Below the pieces are notes generated by a model. It saw only the letters and a list, made by a program, of their open reading frames with translations. It searched no databases and was not told the DNA's origin. The translations under genes and the position numbers were made by a program. 64,000 nt of DNA from Guillardia theta CCMP2712 (taxonomy: Eukaryota > Protista > Cryptophyta), in contig NW_005434521.1 in assembly GCF_000315625.1 (NCBI RefSeq), positions 54,525 through 118,524 of the forward strand, in the 5' to 3' direction. This document shows positions 48,448 to 63,250 of the stretch, in pieces; within the stretch, counting starts at the first letter, position 1, and each line of letters starts with the position of its first letter.

Positions 48448-49588
48448 GGGGAATGAGGGAGATGAGTTGGGGATCGGGTTGACAACTCGGTCAGGGAGGG
48501 GACGAGGCTGCGATCAACATGAGGGCGATGAGTGACTACCCCCCACCTATCCATAGAATTTCTGCAAAAGTTCTCCCCTAGTTCGTTGCGGTGGTGAGGG
48601 TAGTGACTTCGGGGTATTTCCCCCAATAAACAGAAGGAGAAAGGGGGGTGGGGGTACTTTCTGTGGAGGTGGTCGGGTGATGTGTGAGTTCGTTTAGTAC
48701 AAGTGCAGTAGGGCGGTAGAGACCCTGGTGGGGTACTCACTATCCCACTCAGAGGTGGGGTACGAAAACCCCGAACAGTAGGGGTCCCTGAACAAATTCG
48801 ATAGCTTGGGGGTAGGGGTAGAGAATCATGGAACTGAGGAGATAGGGTATTTGTGAAGGAGTAAGGGTGGGTGCTAAAATGGGGAGATGTGGGTTGTATA
48901 GTAGGGTAGGGTACTACAAGAGGTGAGTTTTTAGCTCAAGGGTGGGGTTATTTTTCATGAATCAGTAGGGGTGGGTGGGTCATGGGTCGGAGTAGGGGGG
49001 GTGCGGGCGGCCTCTCTCGATTGGCATGCAAGAAGANNNNNNNNNNNNNNNNNNNNNNNNNNNNNNNNNNNNNNNNNNNNNNNNNNNNNNNNNNNNNNNN
49101 NNNNNNNNNNNNNNNNNNNNNNNNNNNNNNNNNNNNGAGAGAGAGAGAGAGGAGCGACAGTGAGGAAGGGAGGAGGGAGAAGATGAAGAGTGGAGGGAGA
49201 TGGAGGGAGGAAGATGGAGGGAAAGAGAGAGACAGTGAGAGGAATGGAGAGTGATAGATAGAGTGGTAGAGAGCAAGATAGAGGCCAGATGGGGGAAACG
49301 ACTGAGTGAGAAGGGAAAAGGTTCAGGTGAGCGGAGAGGGATAGGAGAGAAGCATGGAGCCTAGGAGAAGATATTGCAGAAATAGGAAAGGGACTTGTTG
49401 AAAGGATACCAGGTTGGACCATGTTGACTCCATGAAGTGTGACTCATTCTGAATTGTCAATGGCTCGCACTGTGGGAGGTCGTTCGATGTTTGACTTTGG
49501 TCCCAGCAACCATGACGAGAGAGTGAACGGAGTGGTCAAGAGCGCTTGAATTCTTGTATACAAGAGCTGGAAGGAGAATTTTTTTGGG

Positions 49589-52500
49589 ATGAGGATAAGC
49601 GTTTTTCTTAAGGTTGCTTTGCTTGCACTGGTCTCTCCTTCCGTGGATGCGTTCGTAAGCACCTTCATCGCTCGCCGGGCGCTGTTGCCGTCCGCATGCC
49701 GAGCAAGATGCCACGCGCGGCGACTGAGTGTGTCGTCCTCCTTCGATCAGGGCGATAGCAAGAGCGGGGATGACTTGAAAGACGTCTTCTCTCACCCCAG
49801 CGCTGATCGACCGCACAAGGCACGGGAGGTGCTATCGAGGGACGCGGATGTCGGAGCGGACCTGTCTGACATGACCTCAGCGATCGAGCGTGCTCTGAAG
49901 CATGCAGACTTGGTGCTGCAGGAGACCTCTCATGCCGAGTGGATGCTGAGGGAGGCAGAGCAATCGAAGCAGAAGCAGTTCTTCCTGCAGGAGAAAGAAG
50001 CAGCCATGAAGCGGCTGCAAGGGGAAGGCAGCGACTACCCATCGTTCAACCCGTACATCCAGATGATGCAAGAGTGTGCCGCGAGCGCTTCCAAGGGCCT
50101 CGCAGGACGAGTGGAAGCCTTCCAGACGCTCAAGGACATGGAAGGCCTGGGGATCATTCCCAACCTCTCAACCTACAACGCGCTGATGAACGTGCTGGCA
50201 AAGGCTGCTGCGAGGGGGAAAGCGACCGTGAAGGATGGGCAGGAGGTGCTGAAGATGATCAAGACGCGAGGGTTCACCCCCAGTACCATCACCTACACCA
50301 CGTTCCTGTCTCTGATGGCCAAGTCGGCAAGCTACGGCCACACGGTGCCTCTCGAAGATGGTTTGAACATCCTTGAGAAGATGAAGGAGCAGGAGCTCGG
50401 GATCGACGCGTTCGTGTTTGCCGCGTTGCTGTCACTGTGCACATATGCGCCCATCAAGGAGGGAGAGAGCAGGATTGAGAAGGGCAAGCAGATACTGGCG
50501 TTGATGAGGGAGATGGGGGTTAAGGAGGACATTGTGGTTTACAACGGTTTCCTCGCCATCTGCGCCAAGTGCAACGACGCGAAACTTGAGGACGGGATGG
50601 AGGTGCTTGAGAGCATGAGGGAGAACAAGATCAACCCAGACACCTACACGTTCGCCACTCTGTTCGACCTCTGCGCCAACATTATGCCAAGGAGGCGGGT
50701 GACCATGTCCGATGTACAGAAGATTGTGCAGCAGATGCAGTCCAACAGGGTGCCTCCTAGCACCACGTTGTACAACTCAATCCTCAAGGTGAGGAGCCGG
50801 AGGGGCCGACGGACTTGACTGACTGTGATGGGTCAGGTGTACGTCAAGGCAGCGAGAAGGAAGTGGATTAGCTCTCGTGAGACAGAGGATGTGATCAAGA
50901 CGATGGAAAAGTTGGGTCTGAAGTTGGACAGGTAGTGTTGGTGATTGCGATTGCGATTGTGGTGCTGGTGGAGATTGAGATGATGGAGATGATGATGATC
51001 ACGCCATGAAGATGTTATCCCACTCCACGACTCTATGTGATGATGATGATTGGATGTACCAAGTTGGAATAATTCGTCTGAAATGACTCTGCCGTCAAGG
51101 ATCACTTATGGGACTTGGCTTGACATTCTTCGATATGCCGCTTTGAATGGGCTTGCAAAGCGAGGCGATGCCAAGAAAGTCATCGACAAGGTACGGGGGG
51201 AGGGGAGAAGAGGAGATGGTGGGGGAAGAGGAGGAGAGTGGGGCGAAGGGGAAAGGGAGGAGAAGGGGGAGACTGTGGAGGCAGAAGTTGATGGCTGCTG
51301 GAAGATGAGAGAAAGCGGGATGGCTCCGTCGAGCGAGATGTACCATCTTTGGTTGGACGTGATCCTCAAAGAGGCTACGAATGGAGCAGCGACTGTGCGA
51401 GACGGCATTGAAGTCGTCAAGTTCATGCAGAAAGTTGGGCAGGTGACTGATGAGTCGTTGATAGGCTGCTGCTTCTGCTGCTGTGCCGCTCACTCCTGCT
51501 CCTGCTGCTGCTCCTGCTGCTGCTCTTGTTCCTGCTGCTGCTCCTGGTCGCTCACCAGAGCTCGCAGATCCCTTCCTCTCGCGCATTCAATCGCCTCTTG
51601 AGCATCGGGGTGAAGGCAGCGAAGAACGGCAAGGATAGGATCGGTACTACCTGGCACTGCCCCCGTGCTCTCCTTACCCTCTCACCTCAAGATGCCGGGC
51701 TGGAGGTGCTGGAGCTGATGAAGACCGAAGAGATCCCCCTCTCGTCAGTCTCTCTTTCAACCTTCATCCAGATGGCAAAGGCTGAAGGCAGCCAGCGGGC
51801 CGTGAGCGAGGCCTGGAAGGTGACACTCCACCCCTCTTCTATCCTCTCTCCTGCTCCGTTTTTCCTCTATCCTCTTCGTTCGTTGGCCACCCTTGCAACA
51901 CCCACCTTGTCCCCCCTCCCTTCCTCCCTCTCCAAGTCCCCCCTCTCTCTGCCTCACTCCGCGTCCCCTCCTCCCTCGCATCCCTCACGCTCACTCGCTT
52001 CCCAGCTTTTCATCGCCTCTCCACCGAGCATCAGGAACGAGCAAGTGTACACCGCTATGATGTCCACGTTAGTCAGGGCCAAACAGGTGCTTCCTCCTCT
52101 GCTGCCTTTCTCTACCAGTGATTTCCCCCTCCCTCCCTTCAGAGGCACACGGCAAGCTCGCTGCTGGACATGGCGAAGAAGGATGGGCTGAAACCCAACG
52201 TCTACATGATCAACTCAGCCATGGGGGCCTGCACCACTCCTGAAGACATCCTCAAGGTCCTTCTCCTCTCCTCCTCTCCCTCCCTCTCCCTTCCATTCTC
52301 TGCTCTCGCTTCCTCTCCCTGTGATTCTCTGTCCTCCCTTCCTCTCCCTTCCATTCTCTGCTCCCCTCTCCCCTTTGTCCGCATTCTCCTCTCTCCTCTC
52401 TCCTCGTGTCCAACCTGACGCTCTCTAACACCTGGCGCAGCTTTGGGAGGAGATGCAGGCGAGTGGCCTCGAGAAGGATGCCGTCACCAACAAGTACCTC

Positions 52501-52740
52501 AAGCTCGCGAGCAAGGGAAGAGCTCCCTTCTCTCAGCCGCTCGGTGATCCTCTCCTCCTCGTTTTCGTCCCTCTTGTGCCTCTCCTCGTCCCGTCATCGT
52601 CCTCTCCTCCTCCTCCTCGTCCTCTCCCCCCATGTTGTTCCCTCCTACACGCCCTTGTCAAGACCGGGGCTGACGAGGCTGGTTCAGCAGGGAGAAAGTT
52701 TGGGGGAAGACCGAAGGTTCAGAATCAGTCAGAGGAATGA
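49589..52740 (+). CDS. Plastid-targeted PPR-like protein with 40-aa repeats (paralogue 1), multi-exon
   Basis: Signal peptide MRISVFLKVALLALVSPSVDA|F and transit peptide, then about 10 repeats of type P(N/S/D)xxTYNxL...AK...DG..VL..M...G, then a shorter C-terminal cap. Confidence 0.88.
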
Positions 52741-53022
52741 CGCCACACTCGTTCAGCCCCATCGACTTTTCTCGTTCTCCTGACATGACTCGACCTCTTC
52801 TATTCTTCATTCTTTTTCCTCACTAGTTTTGTTGAGATTACCACCAGCTCGAATGGTGACGAAAAAATAAATGTTCCCGGGACCCATGCTTCTTCTTAGC
52901 ACCACATCGTCCTCGTCCTCCTNNNNNNNNNNNNNNNNNNNNNNNNNNNNNNNNNNNNNNNNNNNNNNNNNNNNNNNNNNNNNNNNNNNNNNNNNNNNNN
53001 NNNNNNNNNNNNNNNNNNNNNN

Positions 53023-59058: not shown

Positions 59059-60078
59059 ATGGCGAGGCATCGCACGCTCATGATACCGATCATGGCGGCT
59101 GTTGCTCTCAGCTTGAGCTCCTCCTCCTCCTTCTCTCCTCCCCCTCTTCATCTCTCCTCATCTCTTGCCTCACAGTCCCTCTCCCCCCCCCCTCTCAGCT
59201 CCTCCTTCTTCCTCTCATCATTATCGTCGACCTCTGTCCTCCCCGTTGCATCCTCCCGTCCTCCTGCTGGCCTCTCTCTCCCACTCTCTCCTTCAACTGG
59301 CTTCGTAAGTCCTGCCATATTTTCCCGATGCTCTGCAGCCTCCGTGTGCCAAACACAGGGGAAGTTCCATGACAGCCGAAGGAATCCATGGTCGACCTGG
59401 CAACGCCCGCCGCCTTCGATTCTGGCCCATCATGGGCATCGCAGGGGCGGTGCCTTGTCCCTGTCCTCCAGCAGCTTCTTCCAAGAATTCAGCACCTTCA
59501 CCTCCATCGAGTTCGCAGCGGGCAATGGCATGCTCGACCTGCCGTCTGCCGTAACTGCGGTTGAGAACCTTCTCGAAGCCTCGGAGGCTCAGCCGAGGAC
59601 GTTGGACTTCATGGCAGCGCTCGGCGCCTGCTACATCGCGGCAGACAGTCCGAGGGAGGACTCGAGCATGCAGGACATATGGAGGATCGTGAGTTGTGAG
59701 GCTGGGCAAGGAGCATGTCGTGCTGACGATGGTGATGGGTCAGGTGAAGAAGTTCGAGGAAAGGAAGGTGGTTCCGAACAAGATGACCGGAACGCACTTC
59801 ATCGGGGTAGTTGTCAAGCTCGCTTCTGTTGGCAAGGCGGGGGTTGCAGACGGTTTTGAGGTGCTGGAGTGGTGTAAGGAGCAAGAAGTGGACACGGACT
59901 TCGTGATTATAGCTCAGGTCGTACGAGGAGGCGATGATTGTGATTGTGATGGTGATGGTGATGGTGATGGTGATTGTGATTGTGATGGTGATTGTGATGG
60001 GGATGGTGATGGTGATGGTGATGGTGATTGTGATGGTGATGGTGATGATGATGGTGGTGGTGGTGGTGGTGGTGATGG

Positions 60079-60140
<62 letters not shown>

Positions 60141-61752
60141 TTGATGATGATGATGCTGCATGCGATTGCACTGATGTATCGGCTGAGTTTGGTTGGAGCA
60201 GATGATGAATGTCTGTGCAAAAGCTGCAGGCTTCGGAGCAGCATCCTACAAGGAGCTGAGGGAGGTGAGGATAGATATTNNNNNNNNNNNNNNNNNNNNN
60301 NNNNNNNNNNNNNNNNNNNNNNNNNNNNNNNNNNNNNNNNNNNNNNNNNNNNNNNNNNNNNNNNNNNNNNNNNNNNNNNNNNNNNNNNNNNNNNNNNNNN
60401 NNNNNNNNNNNNNNTTTCCTTCCCGGTCCCACCATGTCTCAATTGCAGCTCTCTTTGTTTCCGTCATCCCTCTTGTTCTCTCACCCTTCCTCCGCTCTTC
60501 CAGCCCCCCCCCTTTCCCCCCTCCTTTCCCCTCTTCACCGCCCTTCCTCTTCTCCTCTTCCTCCTCTCTTCCTTCCCTTCCCTTCCCTCCTCCTCCTCCT
60601 CTTCTCTCTCCCTCGTTCTCTCATCCCAGCACTCTCCCTCGAGCAACTTGACTCGTCTCTCATTCGCGGGCGCAGGTGGTGGAGTGGGCGAAAGGATTAG
60701 GGGTCAAGCAGCACCTCAACGTGTTCTCCTTCACCTCCATGATGGACGGAGTTGCCAAGGCGGCTACGAGGAGGAACGCGACGGTAGAGGACGGAGATGA
60801 AGTGATGAAGCTTATGAGCGAGTACGGCATCAGGCCCAACTCCCGCACCTTCTCCTCCTACTTCACTGTCTGCGCCAACGTGGCAGCGCACGTGAGGGTG
60901 AAGACGATGGACCAGGCGAGGATGCGATGGGAGCAGATGACGGCGAGCGACTTACAGCCGATGACGGGAACTTTCAACGCGTACCTCAACTGCCTGGCAA
61001 AGAACGCCATGTTCCTGGAGCAGCCGCTGGCGGAGGGGAGAGAAGTAATCAGGATTATGAAGGAAAATGAGCTGGAGAGGAACGAGACGACCTACCTCTC
61101 CCTCATCGAGATCATCCAGCGGAGCCTCGTGTCGCACCCGAAAGAGGGAAAGAAGAAGGACAGGAACGATGATGCTGATGATGATGATGAGGTGGTAGGT
61201 GAGGATCCGGTGGAGGAAGCGTTCGGCGTGGTGGAGGAGATGAAGGAGGAGGAGATCGAAGTGACCTGTGCCACCTACAACGCCATCACCGCGGTGATCG
61301 CAAAGGCAGTGGTGGCAGGGAAGGATAACGTGAAGGAGAGCCTGGAGCGGGTGGATCGGGAGATGGAGGAGCGGGGGATTTCGCCCGACGTCTCCTCCTT
61401 CGCTACGAGAATGGAGATCATCGCGAAACTGACGGGGAGGGGAAGGGCGACATTCTCCGACGGCATCCAGCTGCTGCAGGAGATGAGGAAGCAGGGGATA
61501 TCCCCCACCACCAACGTCTTCAACATCCTCATGGACGTCACGGCCAAGGCGTCGGCCAATGGAAATGTGAGCTTGCGCCTCCTGCTTCTTCTCCTGCTCC
61601 TTCTCCTGCTCCTTCTCCTGCTTCTGCTACTGCTACTGCTACTACTTCTTCTCCTGCCCCTGCTCCTGCTTCTTCTCCTGCTCTTGCTCCTGCCCCTGCT
61701 TCTTCTCCTGCTCCTGCTCCTGCTTCTTCTCCTGCTCCTGCTCCTGCTTCTT

Positions 61753-61788
<36 letters not shown>

Positions 61789-62917
61789 ATCTGTCCCGTG
61801 ACCTCAGGCTCGACTAGAAGATGGGCTAGGAATCTTGCAGTGGATGAAATCCTTCGAAACAAAGCCAGGTAAAACTTGTGCTGGTGCTGGTGCTGGTGCT
61901 GGTGCTGGTGCTGGTGCTGGTGCTGGTGCTGGTGCTGGTGCTGGTGCTGGTGCTGGTGCTGGTGCTGGTGCTGGTGCTGGTGCTGGTGCTTCATGCTTAT
62001 CTCTTGCCCTCTCATCTTGATCGTCTTGTCCGTCCCTCCCCTCCTCATTCTCCTCTCACTCGTTCTGCCATGACGCTGCTCTCAGATCTCCGCACCTACA
62101 ACTCGCTCATGGACCTCATGGCCAAGTCCGCCAGGTTCCGACAGACGCGCGTGCGACATGGGCTGGTGAGGCAGCTGATAGTCCAGCCAAACTGCAGCTG
62201 AAACCCCAGCAGGAGGTGCTGGACCGCATCGAGAAGGACCAGCTCGAGAGAGACTGTTACACCGTAACGAGCTTCATCCAGCTGGCGAAGGAGGACGGGA
62301 GCGTGTCGGGGGTGGAGGAGGCGCGGGAGGTGAAAGGAGGAGGAGGAGGAGGAGGAGGAGGAGGAGGAGGATGAGGATGAGGATGAGGAGGAGGAGGAGG
62401 AGGAAGGGAGAAGAAAGAGAATGTTGGGTGCCATTCAGTACTTGCTCGCAGGTTTTTTCGCTTTTTCCTCCTCATCTCCGAAGTGACAGAACTTACACCG
62501 TCATGATAGCTGCTGAAGCTAGAAGTACCTTCACTCTCCCTTCTTCACTCTCCCTCCGCCACCCCCTCAGTTTCTCTTCTCTTCTTCGTCTCATTTCCTT
62601 GCAGTTGGCAGCGGTAGAGAAGTTGTGGAGAATCTGCTGAAAGATGCTGTCAGGTCTCGCCCGTTCTCCCTTCTTCCCTGTCTCTCCCTCGATGCTTCTC
62701 CTTCCTTTACTTCCGCCTTTCTCCCCCTTCCCCGTTTGCTTTTCTGAGCTCTGAGCAGCAATGGGATCGCTGTGAACAATTTTATGCTCAACGCCGCCAT
62801 GTCGGCGTGCAAGACCGCACAGGTGAAGATGCCGAGGGAGAGGCCAAGAAGAAGAAAGAAAGGAGAGAGAGGATAAGGAGGAGTTAGGCGAAGGCGGGGG
62901 GAGGTGATGGAGAGGGT

Positions 62918-62957
<40 letters not shown>

Positions 62958-63250
62958 AATGATGATGATGATCATGATCATGATGATGATCATCATGATG
63001 ATCATGATGATCATGATGGCGATCATGATGGAGGAGGAGGTGGAAGAAATTGAATGGCAACAGGATGTTCTTGACCTTCACGCGGAATATGGCAAGGGCG
63101 TCGAGATCGACTCGTTTGCACGAGAGTAAGTGGAATGAGCTTGCATGTTCTTGTTCTTGTCAGCGAGGAGACTGAGGCAGGCTTGCACAGGCTCATCAGG
63201 CGAGCAAAGGAGGGCGCTGCGCCAAACCACCGAGAACCTCGACAGTGAGG
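59059..63250 (+). CDS. Plastid-targeted PPR-like protein with 40-aa repeats (paralogue 2), multi-exon; 3' end approximate
   Basis: Hydrophobic leader + SS|F + Ser/Pro-rich transit peptide. Repeats include PDVSSFATRMEIIAKLTGRGRATFSDGIQLLQEMRKQGIS and PTTNVFNILMDVTAKASANGNARLEDGLGILQWMKSFETK (both 40 aa). Same C-terminal cap as paralogue 1. Confidence 0.86.
61877..61989. repeat. Intronic hexamer microsatellite (TGCTGG)n
   Basis: Directly visible perfect array. Confidence 0.95.

What the first reader, a model, noticed from the sequence alone, without database searches (positions are those of the whole stretch)
50039..51760. A 40-residue PPR-like repeat family: candidate new class of modular plastid RNA-binding protein
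Seen in sequence: after splicing by eye, consecutive units count 40, 40, 41, 41, 37, 40, 40, 40, 40 aa, for example PNLSTYNALMNVLAKAAARGKATVKDGQEVLKMIKTRGFT and LDRITYGTWLDILRYAALNGLAKRGDAKKVIDKMRESGMA. Helix A (xxTYNxLxxxxAK) and helix B (xVLxxMxxxGxxP) look like PPR. A regular 5-residue insert (AAxxGxAT..DG) joins them in nearly every unit, so the extra length is a property of the repeat rather than a sporadic loop. Established: organellar helical repeats are 34 (TPR/HAT), 35 (PPR), 37 (HPR) and 38 (OPR) aa. Inference: a lineage-specific 40-mer derivative of PPR acting on plastid RNA, possibly with altered superhelix pitch. I cannot confirm it is unpublished.
Basis: partly seen in the sequence, partly recalled or inferred. 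Interest (0 to 1): 0.85.

Follow-up and report, generated by a model that had tools for sequence, protein, structure and literature searches.

The report
Cryptophyte PPR proteins with 40-residue repeats
This expressed Guillardia theta gene encodes a probably plastid-targeted pentatricopeptide-repeat (PPR) protein whose repeats are regularly 40 instead of 35 residues long, a cryptophyte-wide length variant of a well-known RNA-binding family that I could not find described.

Summary
The gene is Guillardia theta GUITHDRAFT_147424.

The protein has ten units of 40,40,41,41,37,40,40,40,40,40 aa, then three short units (36,34,33). No shuffle of 2000 reaches the lag-40 self-similarity.

It belongs to the PPR family:
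- Pfam PPR_2, PPR_3 and PPR_long pass their cut-offs.
- The top Foldseek hits are designer PPRs and PPR10.
- Profile alignment to 35-aa units needs one 5-residue gap at the helix A/helix B turn.
- AlphaFold gives helix A 15-16, loop 6, helix B 13, loop 6, against 13/3/13/6 in a 35-aa G. theta paralogue.

The base-reading residues (position 5 and the last) are used as in ordinary PPRs.

It is a family trait. At least 11 G. theta loci have 40-42-aa units and at least 7 have 35. Unit spacing across all proteins analysed peaks at 35 and at 40-42, with a trough at 39. Every traceable long-type protein is from a cryptophyte.

Plastid targeting (signal peptide followed by Phe) and RNA binding are inferred. 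Superhelix pitch was not tested. Verdict: a new variant of a known kind, apparently undescribed. The scan's only other notes are on this same window, none on other DNA.

The parts
49505..52886 (+). Transcript of GUITHDRAFT_147424 (10 exons, polyadenylated)
   Evidence: Spliced contigs of runs X1, X5 and X8 start at 49505. Loose poly(A) ends of raw RNA reads (X20) lie at 52886.
49589..50788 (+). CDS exon 1 (aa 1-400): presequence, non-repeat N-terminal region, units 1-6 and the start of unit 7
   Evidence: Open frame. Joint 50788|50837 is present in three runs. Pfam PPR_3 5e-23, PPR_2 3e-21, PPR_long 1e-14.
49589..49651 (+). Predicted signal peptide (aa 1-21, ending ..SVDA)
   Evidence: Read directly from the sequence: a hydrophobic core followed by an A-x-A-like site. 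No predictor was run.
49652..49744 (+). Transit-peptide-like region starting with Phe at +1 (aa 22 to about 52). It is basic and Ser/Ala-rich, with no acidic residue before aa 53.
   Evidence: Read from the sequence. An aromatic residue at +1 is crucial for plastid import in cryptophytes and diatoms (PMC3017844).
50045..51744 (+). Array of ten long PPR units (40,40,41,41,37,40,40,40,40,40 aa; aa 153-551), interrupted by introns 1-5
   Evidence: The AlphaFold model has pLDDT 83.6 with helix A 15-16, loop 6, helix B 13, loop 6.
50837..50931 (+). CDS exon 2
   Evidence: Joints in three runs
51100..51190 (+). CDS exon 3
   Evidence: Joints in three runs
51305..51442 (+). CDS exon 4
   Evidence: Joints in three runs
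51568..51643 (+). CDS exon 5. The NCBI model starts it later and runs on through intron 5.
   Evidence: Joints 51442|51568 and 51643|51692 in three runs. The NCBI protein P0001 differs here. The RNA-supported form restores a complete 40-aa unit 10.
51692..51819 (+). CDS exon 6
   Evidence: Joints in three runs
51745..52479 (+). Three C-terminal short units without the insert (36, 34, 33 aa; aa 552-654), conserved in the orthologues
52006..52086 (+). CDS exon 7
   Evidence: Joints in three runs
52143..52256 (+). CDS exon 8
   Evidence: Joints in three runs
52441..52543 (+). CDS exon 9
   Evidence: Joints in three runs, plus one raw RNA read
52688..52740 (+). CDS exon 10 with the stop codon
   Evidence: Joint 52543|52688 in three runs plus one raw read. 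It agrees with the C-terminus of P0001.
59059..63250 (+). Second long-type PPR gene of the window (paralogue). Its N-terminus again reads as a signal peptide followed by Phe.
   Evidence: The ORF at 60676-61872 has unit spacings 40,41,40,41,40 and Pfam PPR_2 3e-25. I did not verify its exon model.

Best explanation
GUITHDRAFT_147424 is an expressed nuclear gene of the cryptophyte Guillardia theta. It encodes a P-class-like pentatricopeptide-repeat protein.

Its ten main repeats are 40 aa long because every unit carries about five extra residues at the junction of helix A and helix B. Helix A is two to three residues longer, and the A-B turn is six residues instead of three. The rest of the PPR unit is kept: T3, Y/F4, N/T/S5, the Met of helix B, and the G-x-x-P-[DNST] loop before the next unit.

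The insert lies at the end of helix A opposite the base-reading residues (position 5 and the last position). So the protein most likely still reads single-stranded RNA one nucleotide per repeat with the ordinary PPR code, while the inserts form an extra, slightly basic ridge along one edge of the solenoid.

The N-terminus reads as a signal peptide followed by a transit peptide beginning with Phe. That sends the protein to the plastid stroma, where it would stabilise, process or help translate a specific plastid transcript.

The 40-42-aa unit is the commoner PPR format among the G. theta loci I could examine (at least 11 against at least 7) and is shared by other cryptophytes.

Shown: the gene model, expression, the period, PPR membership, the insert position, and family and lineage distribution as far as sampled. 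Inferred: plastid location, RNA binding, the one-nucleotide register and the role of the insert.
For: - Gene model and expression. Nine GT..AG joints are present in transcript contigs of three studies, and poly(A) tails are seen.
- Period. Units measure 40,40,41,41,37,40,40,40,40,40 aa. No shuffle of 2000 reaches the lag-40 score.
- PPR membership by sequence. On P0001, PPR_3 scores 1.2e-36, PPR_2 9.2e-33 and PPR_long 5.9e-21, all above their cut-offs.
- PPR membership by fold. All leading Foldseek PDB hits are PPR proteins: designer cPPR/dPPR at 1e-11 to 4e-09 with 22-26% identity, PPR10, and PPR subunits of the plastid RNA polymerase and of mitoribosomes.
- Insert position. Global hhalign of the 40-aa unit profile against the 35-aa unit profile gives probability 96.5% with a single 5-residue gap after canonical position 17. 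The 38-, 41- and 42-aa units show 3-, 6- and 7-residue gaps at the same place.
- Structure. The AlphaFold model has pLDDT 83.6 with a 15-16/6/13/6 layout. A 35-aa G. theta paralogue folded the same way gives 13/3/13/6.
- Code residues. Position 5 is N 0.60, T 0.14, S 0.11. The last position is D 0.49, N 0.17, S 0.17, T 0.13. The commonest dyad is N-D, as in the 35-aa units.
- Family in G. theta. At least 11 loci have 40-42-aa spacing and at least 7 have 35.
- Family more widely. Over 150 representative relatives plus further cluster members and G. theta open frames, spacing peaks at 35 (896) and at 40/41/42 (151/70/67), with 17 at 39.
- Lineage. Named long-type proteins come only from G. theta, Baffinella frigidus and Hemiselmis. 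Two metagenomic long-type genes have neighbours whose best named matches are Teleaulax amphioxeia (48%) and G. theta (64%).
- Constraint on the insert. Orthologues keep the insert length and its Gly.
- Targeting rule. An aromatic residue at +1 of the transit peptide is crucial for plastid import in cryptophytes (PMC3017844).
Against: - No experiment or predictor supports the localisation. I read the signal peptide and its cleavage site by eye.
- No RNA-binding data exist for any long-type PPR.
- Only about half of the ten long units carry a dyad with a known nucleotide assignment. Several have A, G, H or I at position 5, so binding may be partly non-canonical.
- The single-unit Pfam models stay below their cut-offs: PF01535 scores 17.5 against 25 bits, and PF12854 scores 18.5 against 23.8.
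- TM-scores to designer PPRs are only 0.55-0.59 with rmsd 6-7 A. The overall superhelix may therefore differ, or the single-sequence model may be imprecise.
- The lineage range is known only from the best 150 representatives and a few named sequences. Absence elsewhere is not shown.
Confidence: 0.7

Rival explanations
1. It is a PPR-derived solenoid that no longer acts as a sequence-specific code reader. It could be a structural or adaptor PPR, as in ribosomes or polymerase complexes, or the enlarged A-B junction could serve as a docking surface for a partner protein.
For: Five of the ten long units have non-code residues (I, A, A, G, H) at position 5. Many structural hits are ribosomal or polymerase-associated PPR subunits that bind non-canonically (PMC13041630). 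The insert is conserved in length and has a net basic charge of +0.73 per unit, as a functional surface would.
Against: Family-wide use of N/T/S at position 5 and D/N/S/T at the last position matches that of ordinary P-class units. That is hard to explain without selection for base reading.
Confidence: 0.18
2. It is a real long-type PPR but works elsewhere than the plastid stroma: in the periplastidial compartment on nucleomorph transcripts, in mitochondria, or along the secretory route.
For: The targeting call rests on reading the sequence alone. Other long-type G. theta loci have signal-peptide-like N-termini without an obvious Phe at +1, for example those on C7 and C1.
Against: The focal protein has the hydrophobic N-terminus, an ..VDA|F.. 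junction and a basic, acid-free stretch of about 30 residues. That is the pattern tied to stromal import in cryptophytes and diatoms (PMC3017844). The neighbouring paralogue and GUITHDRAFT_112421 show the same pattern.
Confidence: 0.1
3. It is not a PPR but a separate helical-repeat family of 38-40 aa (OPR/HPR-like, or TPR/Sel1-like) that merely resembles PPR.
For: OPR repeats are described as 38-40 aa (PMC8635915). The single-unit PPR models fall below their cut-offs.
Against: Three Pfam PPR models pass with E-values from 1e-21 to 1e-36, and no TPR, Sel1, FAST or RAP model appears at E of 0.01 or better. hhalign aligns the unit end to end with the 35-aa PPR unit using one gap. Foldseek returns PPR proteins only among the top matches.
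Confidence: 0.02
4. The extra residues are an artefact of splicing by eye or of gene prediction (intron sequence read as coding).
For: The NCBI model does contain such an error at exon 5 and intron 5.
Against: Six long units lie in one uninterrupted exon. All nine joints are seen in transcript contigs of three studies. Only one intron (intron 5) falls in an insert region, and its removal is RNA-supported and restores exactly 40 aa.
Confidence: 0.01

Closest known systems
P-class pentatricopeptide repeat proteins (e.g. maize PPR10, PDB 4m57/4m59; designer dPPR/cPPR, PDB 5i9f, 5orm)
   Same: Same fold: helix A, turn, helix B hairpins stacked into a solenoid. Same signature residues and the same usage of position 5 and the last position. 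Same Pfam families. Nuclear-encoded with an organelle presequence.
   Different: The unit is 40-42 aa instead of 35. Helix A is 2-3 residues longer and the A-B turn is 6 residues instead of 3, in nearly every unit and in many genes. The single-unit Pfam models (PF01535, PF12854) miss it. No function is known.
L and S motif variants of PLS-class PPR proteins of land plants (35-36 and 31-32 aa)
   Same: Length variants of the PPR unit that occur regularly within a protein and define a subclass.
   Different: PLS variants differ by 1-4 residues, alternate in P-L-S triplets, are tied to RNA-editing domains (E, DYW) and are restricted to plants. Here one long unit type is repeated uniformly, no E or DYW domain is present, and the lineage is cryptophytes.
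Octatricopeptide (OPR, 38-40 aa) and heptatricopeptide (HPR, 37 aa) repeat proteins
   Same: Organellar alpha-solenoid RNA-binding proteins with units longer than 35 aa in algae and alveolates.
   Different: They are separate sequence families. The units here align end to end with PPR and pass the PPR models, and no RAP or FAST domains are found.
38-aa PPR proteins of Chromera velia (P0012 = Cvel_19306, P0024 = Cvel_7616), found here
   Same: They are PPR by Pfam (PPR_2 1.5e-130). They have a strictly regular longer period caused by an insert at the same A-B turn.
   Different: The insert is 3 residues, not 5-7. The lineage (alveolate) and the insert consensus differ, so this is probably an independent elongation.
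Sel1-like repeats relative to TPR
   Same: An analogy only: a known case where a helical-repeat family (TPR, 34 aa) has a subfamily with regularly longer units (36-44 aa).
   Different: An unrelated sequence family that binds proteins. This comparison rests on my own knowledge and was not tested here.

Membership tests
PPR (Pfam clan of PF01535, PF12854, PF13041, PF13812, PF17177) | Score above the curated Pfam cut-off for PPR models | tested here: met
   On P0001, PPR_3 scores 125 bits (cut-off 25), PPR_2 112.6 (30) and PPR_long 75.3 (27). Exon 1 alone also passes.
PPR | Match to the single-unit models PF01535 (31 positions) and PF12854 (34 positions) | tested here: not met
   PF01535 scores 17.5 bits against 25, and its only partial match is to a short C-terminal unit. 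PF12854 scores 18.5 against 23.8. The insert splits the unit for these models.
PPR | Repeat period of 35 aa (31-36 in the known P, L and S variants) | tested here: not met
   Ten units measure 40,40,41,41,37,40,40,40,40,40 aa. Only the last three units are 33-36 aa.
PPR | Two antiparallel helices per unit, stacked into a solenoid that resembles solved PPR structures | tested here: met
   The AlphaFold model has pLDDT 83.6 and 18 helices in A/B pairs. The top Foldseek hits are designer PPRs and PPR10, probability 1.00, E from 1e-11 to 1e-07.
PPR | Conserved unit signature (T3, Y/F4, Ala at the start of helix B, Met in helix B, G-x-x-P-D loop) | tested here: met
   Consensus of 83 units of 40 aa: T3 0.54, Y/F4 0.94, M32 0.73, G36 0.66, P39 0.75, D40 0.49. 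The helix-B Ala position holds G 0.42 or A 0.31. Global hhalign to 35-aa units gives probability 96.5%.
PPR | Base-specifying dyad: N/T/S at position 5 and D/N/S/T at the last position | tested here: met
   Dyad usage in 40-, 41- and 42-aa units mirrors that of 35-aa units, with N-D commonest at 0.31-0.39. In the focal protein, 5 of the 10 long units carry an assignable dyad.
PPR | Organelle targeting | tested here: inconclusive
   The N-terminus reads as a signal peptide followed by Phe and a basic transit-like stretch. The rule is taken from PMC3017844. No predictor or experiment was available.
PPR | Sequence-specific binding of single-stranded RNA | not testable with these tools
   This needs Bind-n-Seq, RIP-seq or small-RNA footprint data.
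OPR / HPR (FASTK-like helical repeats, 37-40 aa) | Similarity to OPR/HPR/FASTK proteins, often with FAST or RAP domains | tested here: not met
   No FAST or RAP model appears at E of 0.01 or better. Foldseek top hits are PPR proteins. The unit profile aligns to PPR. No OPR or HPR profile was available for a direct comparison.
TPR / Sel1-like repeats | Match to TPR or Sel1 Pfam models | tested here: not met
   None is listed for P0001 at E of 0.01 or better.

The most novel reading that the evidence does not exclude
The PPR unit is not fixed at 35 aa. Algal lineages with red-derived plastids may each have fixed their own discrete period by inserting at the A-B turn: 40-42 aa in cryptophytes and 38 aa in Chromera, plus 32 aa and alternating 44/38 aa in organisms not yet identified. 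In cryptophytes the conserved, basic 5-7-residue ridge would then be functional. It would change superhelix geometry or provide a second contact surface for the RNA backbone or a partner protein (as MORF proteins use L motifs). Long-type PPRs would then read RNA with an altered register or affinity, and would offer a new scaffold for designer RNA binders.
Probability: 0.15. Interest if true: 0.7.

Novelty: new variant of a known kind. Interest (0 to 1): 0.5.

Why it matters
PPR proteins are the main sequence-specific RNA binders of organelles and a platform for designer RNA-binding proteins. Their 35-aa unit, with the 31-36-aa plant variants, is treated as defining.

- Tolerance of the scaffold. 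An algal lineage in which the commoner PPR format among the loci examined is a regular 40-42-aa unit shows that the scaffold tolerates, and keeps, a longer helix A and A-B turn while retaining the code residues.
- Annotation. Single-unit PPR models and motif callers tuned to 31-36 aa will split or under-call these proteins. The public model of this very gene is mis-spliced in a repeat.
- Biology. The work supplies named candidates for the almost unstudied post-transcriptional control of cryptophyte plastid genes.
- Engineering. A consensus 40-mer could be built and compared with dPPR for pitch, stability and RNA affinity.

It does not overturn anything. It extends a known family.

Tried and rejected
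- Word-indexed protein search. Searching with exon 1 returned only the protein itself, because the 8000-candidate prefilter saturated. It says nothing about relatives, so I used the exhaustive representative search instead.
- Second batch of G. theta loci. The census is therefore a lower bound. C10 and C40 are classed as long-type only from autocorrelation on shorter loci.
- Raw RNA reads. Run X20 covers only the 3' end, as a 3'-biased library would. It supports only the last two joints and the poly(A) site. The other joints rest on assembled transcript contigs whose 'RNA' label is the tool's guess. Their spliced form and their 57-59% share of the genomic words fit RNA.
- ESM Atlas look-alikes. 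These gave only generic PPR clusters (diatoms, haptophytes, plants), with no way to read periods.
- Targeting difference between types. I looked for one by reading N-termini of open frames. Both the 40-type and the 35-type include signal-peptide-like starts, so I make no claim that the long type alone is plastidic.
- Superhelix pitch. It could not be measured because model coordinates are not exposed.
- Target RNA. I did not try to predict one from the dyads: only about five positions are informative and the plastid genome was not at hand.
- Rejected readings. A mis-splicing artefact, and OPR, HPR, TPR or Sel1 membership (see the rival explanations).
- Operators' limits.
Full report
**What is there**

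The window is nuclear DNA of the cryptophyte Guillardia theta CCMP2712. An exact protein match names the gene GUITHDRAFT_147424 (P0001, 692 aa), and the window is G000:C153:54525-118524.

I built a GT..AG exon model from the sequence. I then laid public runs on window 49500-52900.

- Single spliced contigs in three runs from three studies (X1, X5, X8) carry all nine joints of my model: 50788|50837, 50931|51100, 51190|51305, 51442|51568, 51643|51692, 51819|52006, 52086|52143, 52256|52441 and 52543|52688.
- The contigs start at 49505, and raw RNA reads end in poly(A) at 52886.
- The 'RNA' label of these contig runs is the tool's guess. The spliced form itself is the evidence.
- The NCBI protein is wrong in one place. 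It starts exon 5 too late and reads through intron 5. The RNA-supported form replaces an odd stretch with a complete repeat unit.

**The repeat**

I cut the units at the conserved boundary (..G-x-x-P-[DNS] | x-x-T-Y-N..). The protein has ten units of 40,40,41,41,37,40,40,40,40,40 aa (aa 153-551, window 50045-51744). Three short units of 36, 34 and 33 aa follow.

BLOSUM62 self-similarity of the ten units peaks at lag 40 (0.267, next best -0.42). None of 2000 shuffles reaches that value. For the part inside exon 1, where splicing plays no role, 1 of 2000 does.

**What it is**

Sequence and fold both place it in the PPR family.

- Pfam puts it above the cut-offs of PPR_3 (1.2e-36), PPR_2 (9.2e-33) and PPR_long (5.9e-21). 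The two single-unit models, PF01535 and PF12854, stay below theirs.
- A single-sequence AlphaFold model of aa 148-527 is confident (mean pLDDT 83.6). It is a regular stack of helix pairs.
- Its best matches among solved structures are designer PPR proteins (E 1e-11 to 4e-09, 22-26% identity), maize PPR10, and PPR subunits of the plastid RNA polymerase and of mitoribosomes.

To place the extra residues I needed many units. I built a 24-residue HMM across the unit boundary, a segment that long and short units share.

| Unit length | Consensus |
|---|---|
| 40 aa (83 distinct units) | VVTYNALLdVCAKAArrGRAsLaDGlkVLeeMRaaGLePD |
| 35 aa (908 units) | VVTYNALIdACAKAGdlEeALeLLeEMKeaGVkPD |

- Global profile-profile alignment joins the two with one 5-residue gap after canonical position 17, at the helix A/helix B turn (probability 96.5%).
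- The 38-, 41- and 42-aa units need 3-, 6- and 7-residue gaps at the same place.
- In the model, the long units have helix A of 15-16 residues, a loop of 6, helix B of 13 and a loop of 6.
- A 35-aa G. theta paralogue folded the same way has 13, 3, 13 and 6.

**Is it a family?**

Yes.

- In G. theta, the open frames at PPR loci fall into two groups. At least 11 loci have spacings of 40-42: both genes of this window, C30, C54, C1:1137k, C7, C59, C11:817k, C11:1089k, C100 and C55. At least 7 have spacings of 35: C23 twice, C93, C20, C1:13k, C68 and C12.
- Within G. theta the spacing counts are 31 at 35, none at 38, three at 39, and 17/14/10 at 40/41/42.
- Over all proteins analysed the spacing histogram has peaks at 35 (896) and at 40/41/42 (151/70/67), with 17 at 39.
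- By protein, 43 of 160 are long-type and 97 are 35-type.
- Other discrete periods also appear. There is a strict 38 in two Chromera velia proteins and three unnamed ones, a strict 32 in three metagenomic proteins, and alternating 44/38 in two more.

**Lineage**

- Every long-type protein with a name is from a cryptophyte: several G. theta genes, two from Baffinella frigidus CCMP2293, and Hemiselmis.
- I traced two abundant metagenomic long-type genes through their neighbours. A glycosyltransferase next to P0011 is closest to Teleaulax amphioxeia (48%). A photolyase near P0177 is closest to G. theta (64%, against 52% for Emiliania).
- This fits a cryptophyte trait. It does not show absence elsewhere, since only the best 150 representatives were examined.
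- Orthologues of the focal protein keep the inserts at the same length with a conserved Gly. They also share the three short C-terminal units.

**How it most likely works**

- The two residues that specify the base in PPR proteins are used in the long units as in ordinary ones. Position 5 is N 0.60, T 0.14, S 0.11. The last position is D 0.49, N 0.17, S 0.17, T 0.13. N-D is the commonest dyad in 35-, 40-, 41- and 42-aa units alike.
- These residues sit at the start of helix A and just before it. The insert is at the other end of helix A.
- I therefore infer that the protein still reads single-stranded RNA one nucleotide per unit.
- I also infer that the inserts form an additional, slightly basic ridge along one edge of the solenoid: net charge +0.73 per insert region against +0.12 for the ordinary turn.
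- In the focal protein only five of the ten long units have an assignable dyad (C, G, U, U, C), so part of the binding may be non-canonical.
- The N-terminus is a hydrophobic signal-peptide-like segment ending ..SVDA. A Phe follows, then about 30 basic, acid-free residues.
- An aromatic residue at +1 of the transit peptide is the feature reported as crucial for plastid import in cryptophytes and diatoms (PMC3017844).
- The second gene of the window and GUITHDRAFT_112421 show the same pattern.
- Plastid location and RNA binding remain inferences. The moderate TM-scores of 0.55-0.59 to designer PPRs neither support nor exclude it.

**Comparison with what is known, and novelty**

The protein is a member of the PPR family by sequence and fold. 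It fails the classical 35-aa period and the single-unit models.

- Known PPR length variants are the plant P, L and S motifs of 31-36 aa (PMC13041630).
- OPR (38-40 aa) and HPR (37 aa) are separate families (PMC8635915 and PMC6212722).
- Full-text searches found no description of a 40-aa PPR unit. They combined pentatricopeptide with Guillardia, with cryptophyte, with '40 amino acid', and with the names of the other tricopeptide families.
- A 2025 review states that repeats outside 34-38 aa are apparently missing (PMC12691811).
- A 2026 survey of organellar alpha-solenoids covers Archaeplastida only (PMC13126933).
- A dinoflagellate review mentions a SACEK variant of the 35-aa unit in some cryptophytes, which is a different feature (PMC12787238).
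- The library lacks most subscription journals, so prior description cannot be excluded.

I class this as a new variant of a known kind.

**Verdict**

The core of its interpretation also holds: a lineage-associated, family-wide 40-residue derivative of PPR.

- 'New class' overstates it.
- The period is 40-42, not exactly 40.
- Function and geometry remain inferred.

Interest is moderate. This is a clean and apparently unreported extension of a major RNA-binding family, with practical consequences for annotation and protein design, but it is not a new kind of system.

The scan's other notes on this same window (s1-437049, s1-444014) describe the same gene pair. They pointed me to the second gene, whose 40/41 spacing I confirmed. 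I found no note on other DNA.

Noticed in passing
window 51442-51692: The public protein model of GUITHDRAFT_147424 (P0001) is mis-spliced. It uses a later acceptor for exon 5 and retains intron 5 (51644-51691). Transcript contigs of three studies support 51442|51568 and 51643|51692, which restore a complete 40-aa unit.
   Followed up: yes
window 52288-52385: Separate contigs in runs X5 and X8 skip 96 bases (ends CC..AT, not GT..AG) inside intron 8, and carry 81-103 unmatched letters before 52268. This could be an allele or assembly variant of the CT-rich intron, or unspliced RNA from a second haplotype.
   Followed up: no
window 59059-63250: A second long-type PPR gene lies about 6 kb downstream. 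It has unit spacings 40,41,40,41,40, one unit with a long acidic insert, and a signal-peptide-plus-Phe N-terminus. Microsatellite-like coding and intron runs and N-masked stretches interrupt it, and I did not verify its exon model.
   Followed up: partly
P0012 and P0024 (Chromera velia Cvel_19306, Cvel_7616); also P0039, P0073, P0138: Large PPR proteins with a strictly regular 38-aa unit (for example 12 of 14 spacings at exactly 38). The cause is a 3-residue insert at the same A-B turn. This looks like a separate length class in an alveolate alga.
   Followed up: partly
P0109 (1333 aa, metagenomic); also P0121, P0129: PPR proteins with a perfectly regular 32-aa unit (15 of 15 spacings). P0109 also has an N-terminal TIR_2 domain (6.5e-16), an unusual TIR-PPR fusion from an unknown organism.
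   Followed up: no
P0069 and P0113 (metagenomic): PPR proteins whose units alternate between 44 and 38 aa. P0057 alternates between 35 and 42. These are heteroperiodic arrays reminiscent of plant PLS triplets but with different lengths.
   Followed up: no
L052:8003-9964 (metagenomic cryptophyte-like contig): Directly upstream of a long-type PPR gene lies a 653-aa gene with an RRM_1 domain and faint PPR_2 hits. It may be an RRM-PPR fusion, or the two called genes may be one.
   Followed up: no
P0155 (cluster of P0011): A member of a eukaryotic, cryptophyte-like long-type PPR cluster is deposited in NCBI as a protein of a 'Promethearchaeia archaeon' MAG. This is most likely a mis-binned eukaryotic contig.
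   Followed up: no
P0002 (Baffinella frigidus KAJ1467429.1): The orthologue's public model contains several near-identical duplicated segments inside repeat units. These look like gene-model or assembly artefacts rather than real extra repeats.
   Followed up: no
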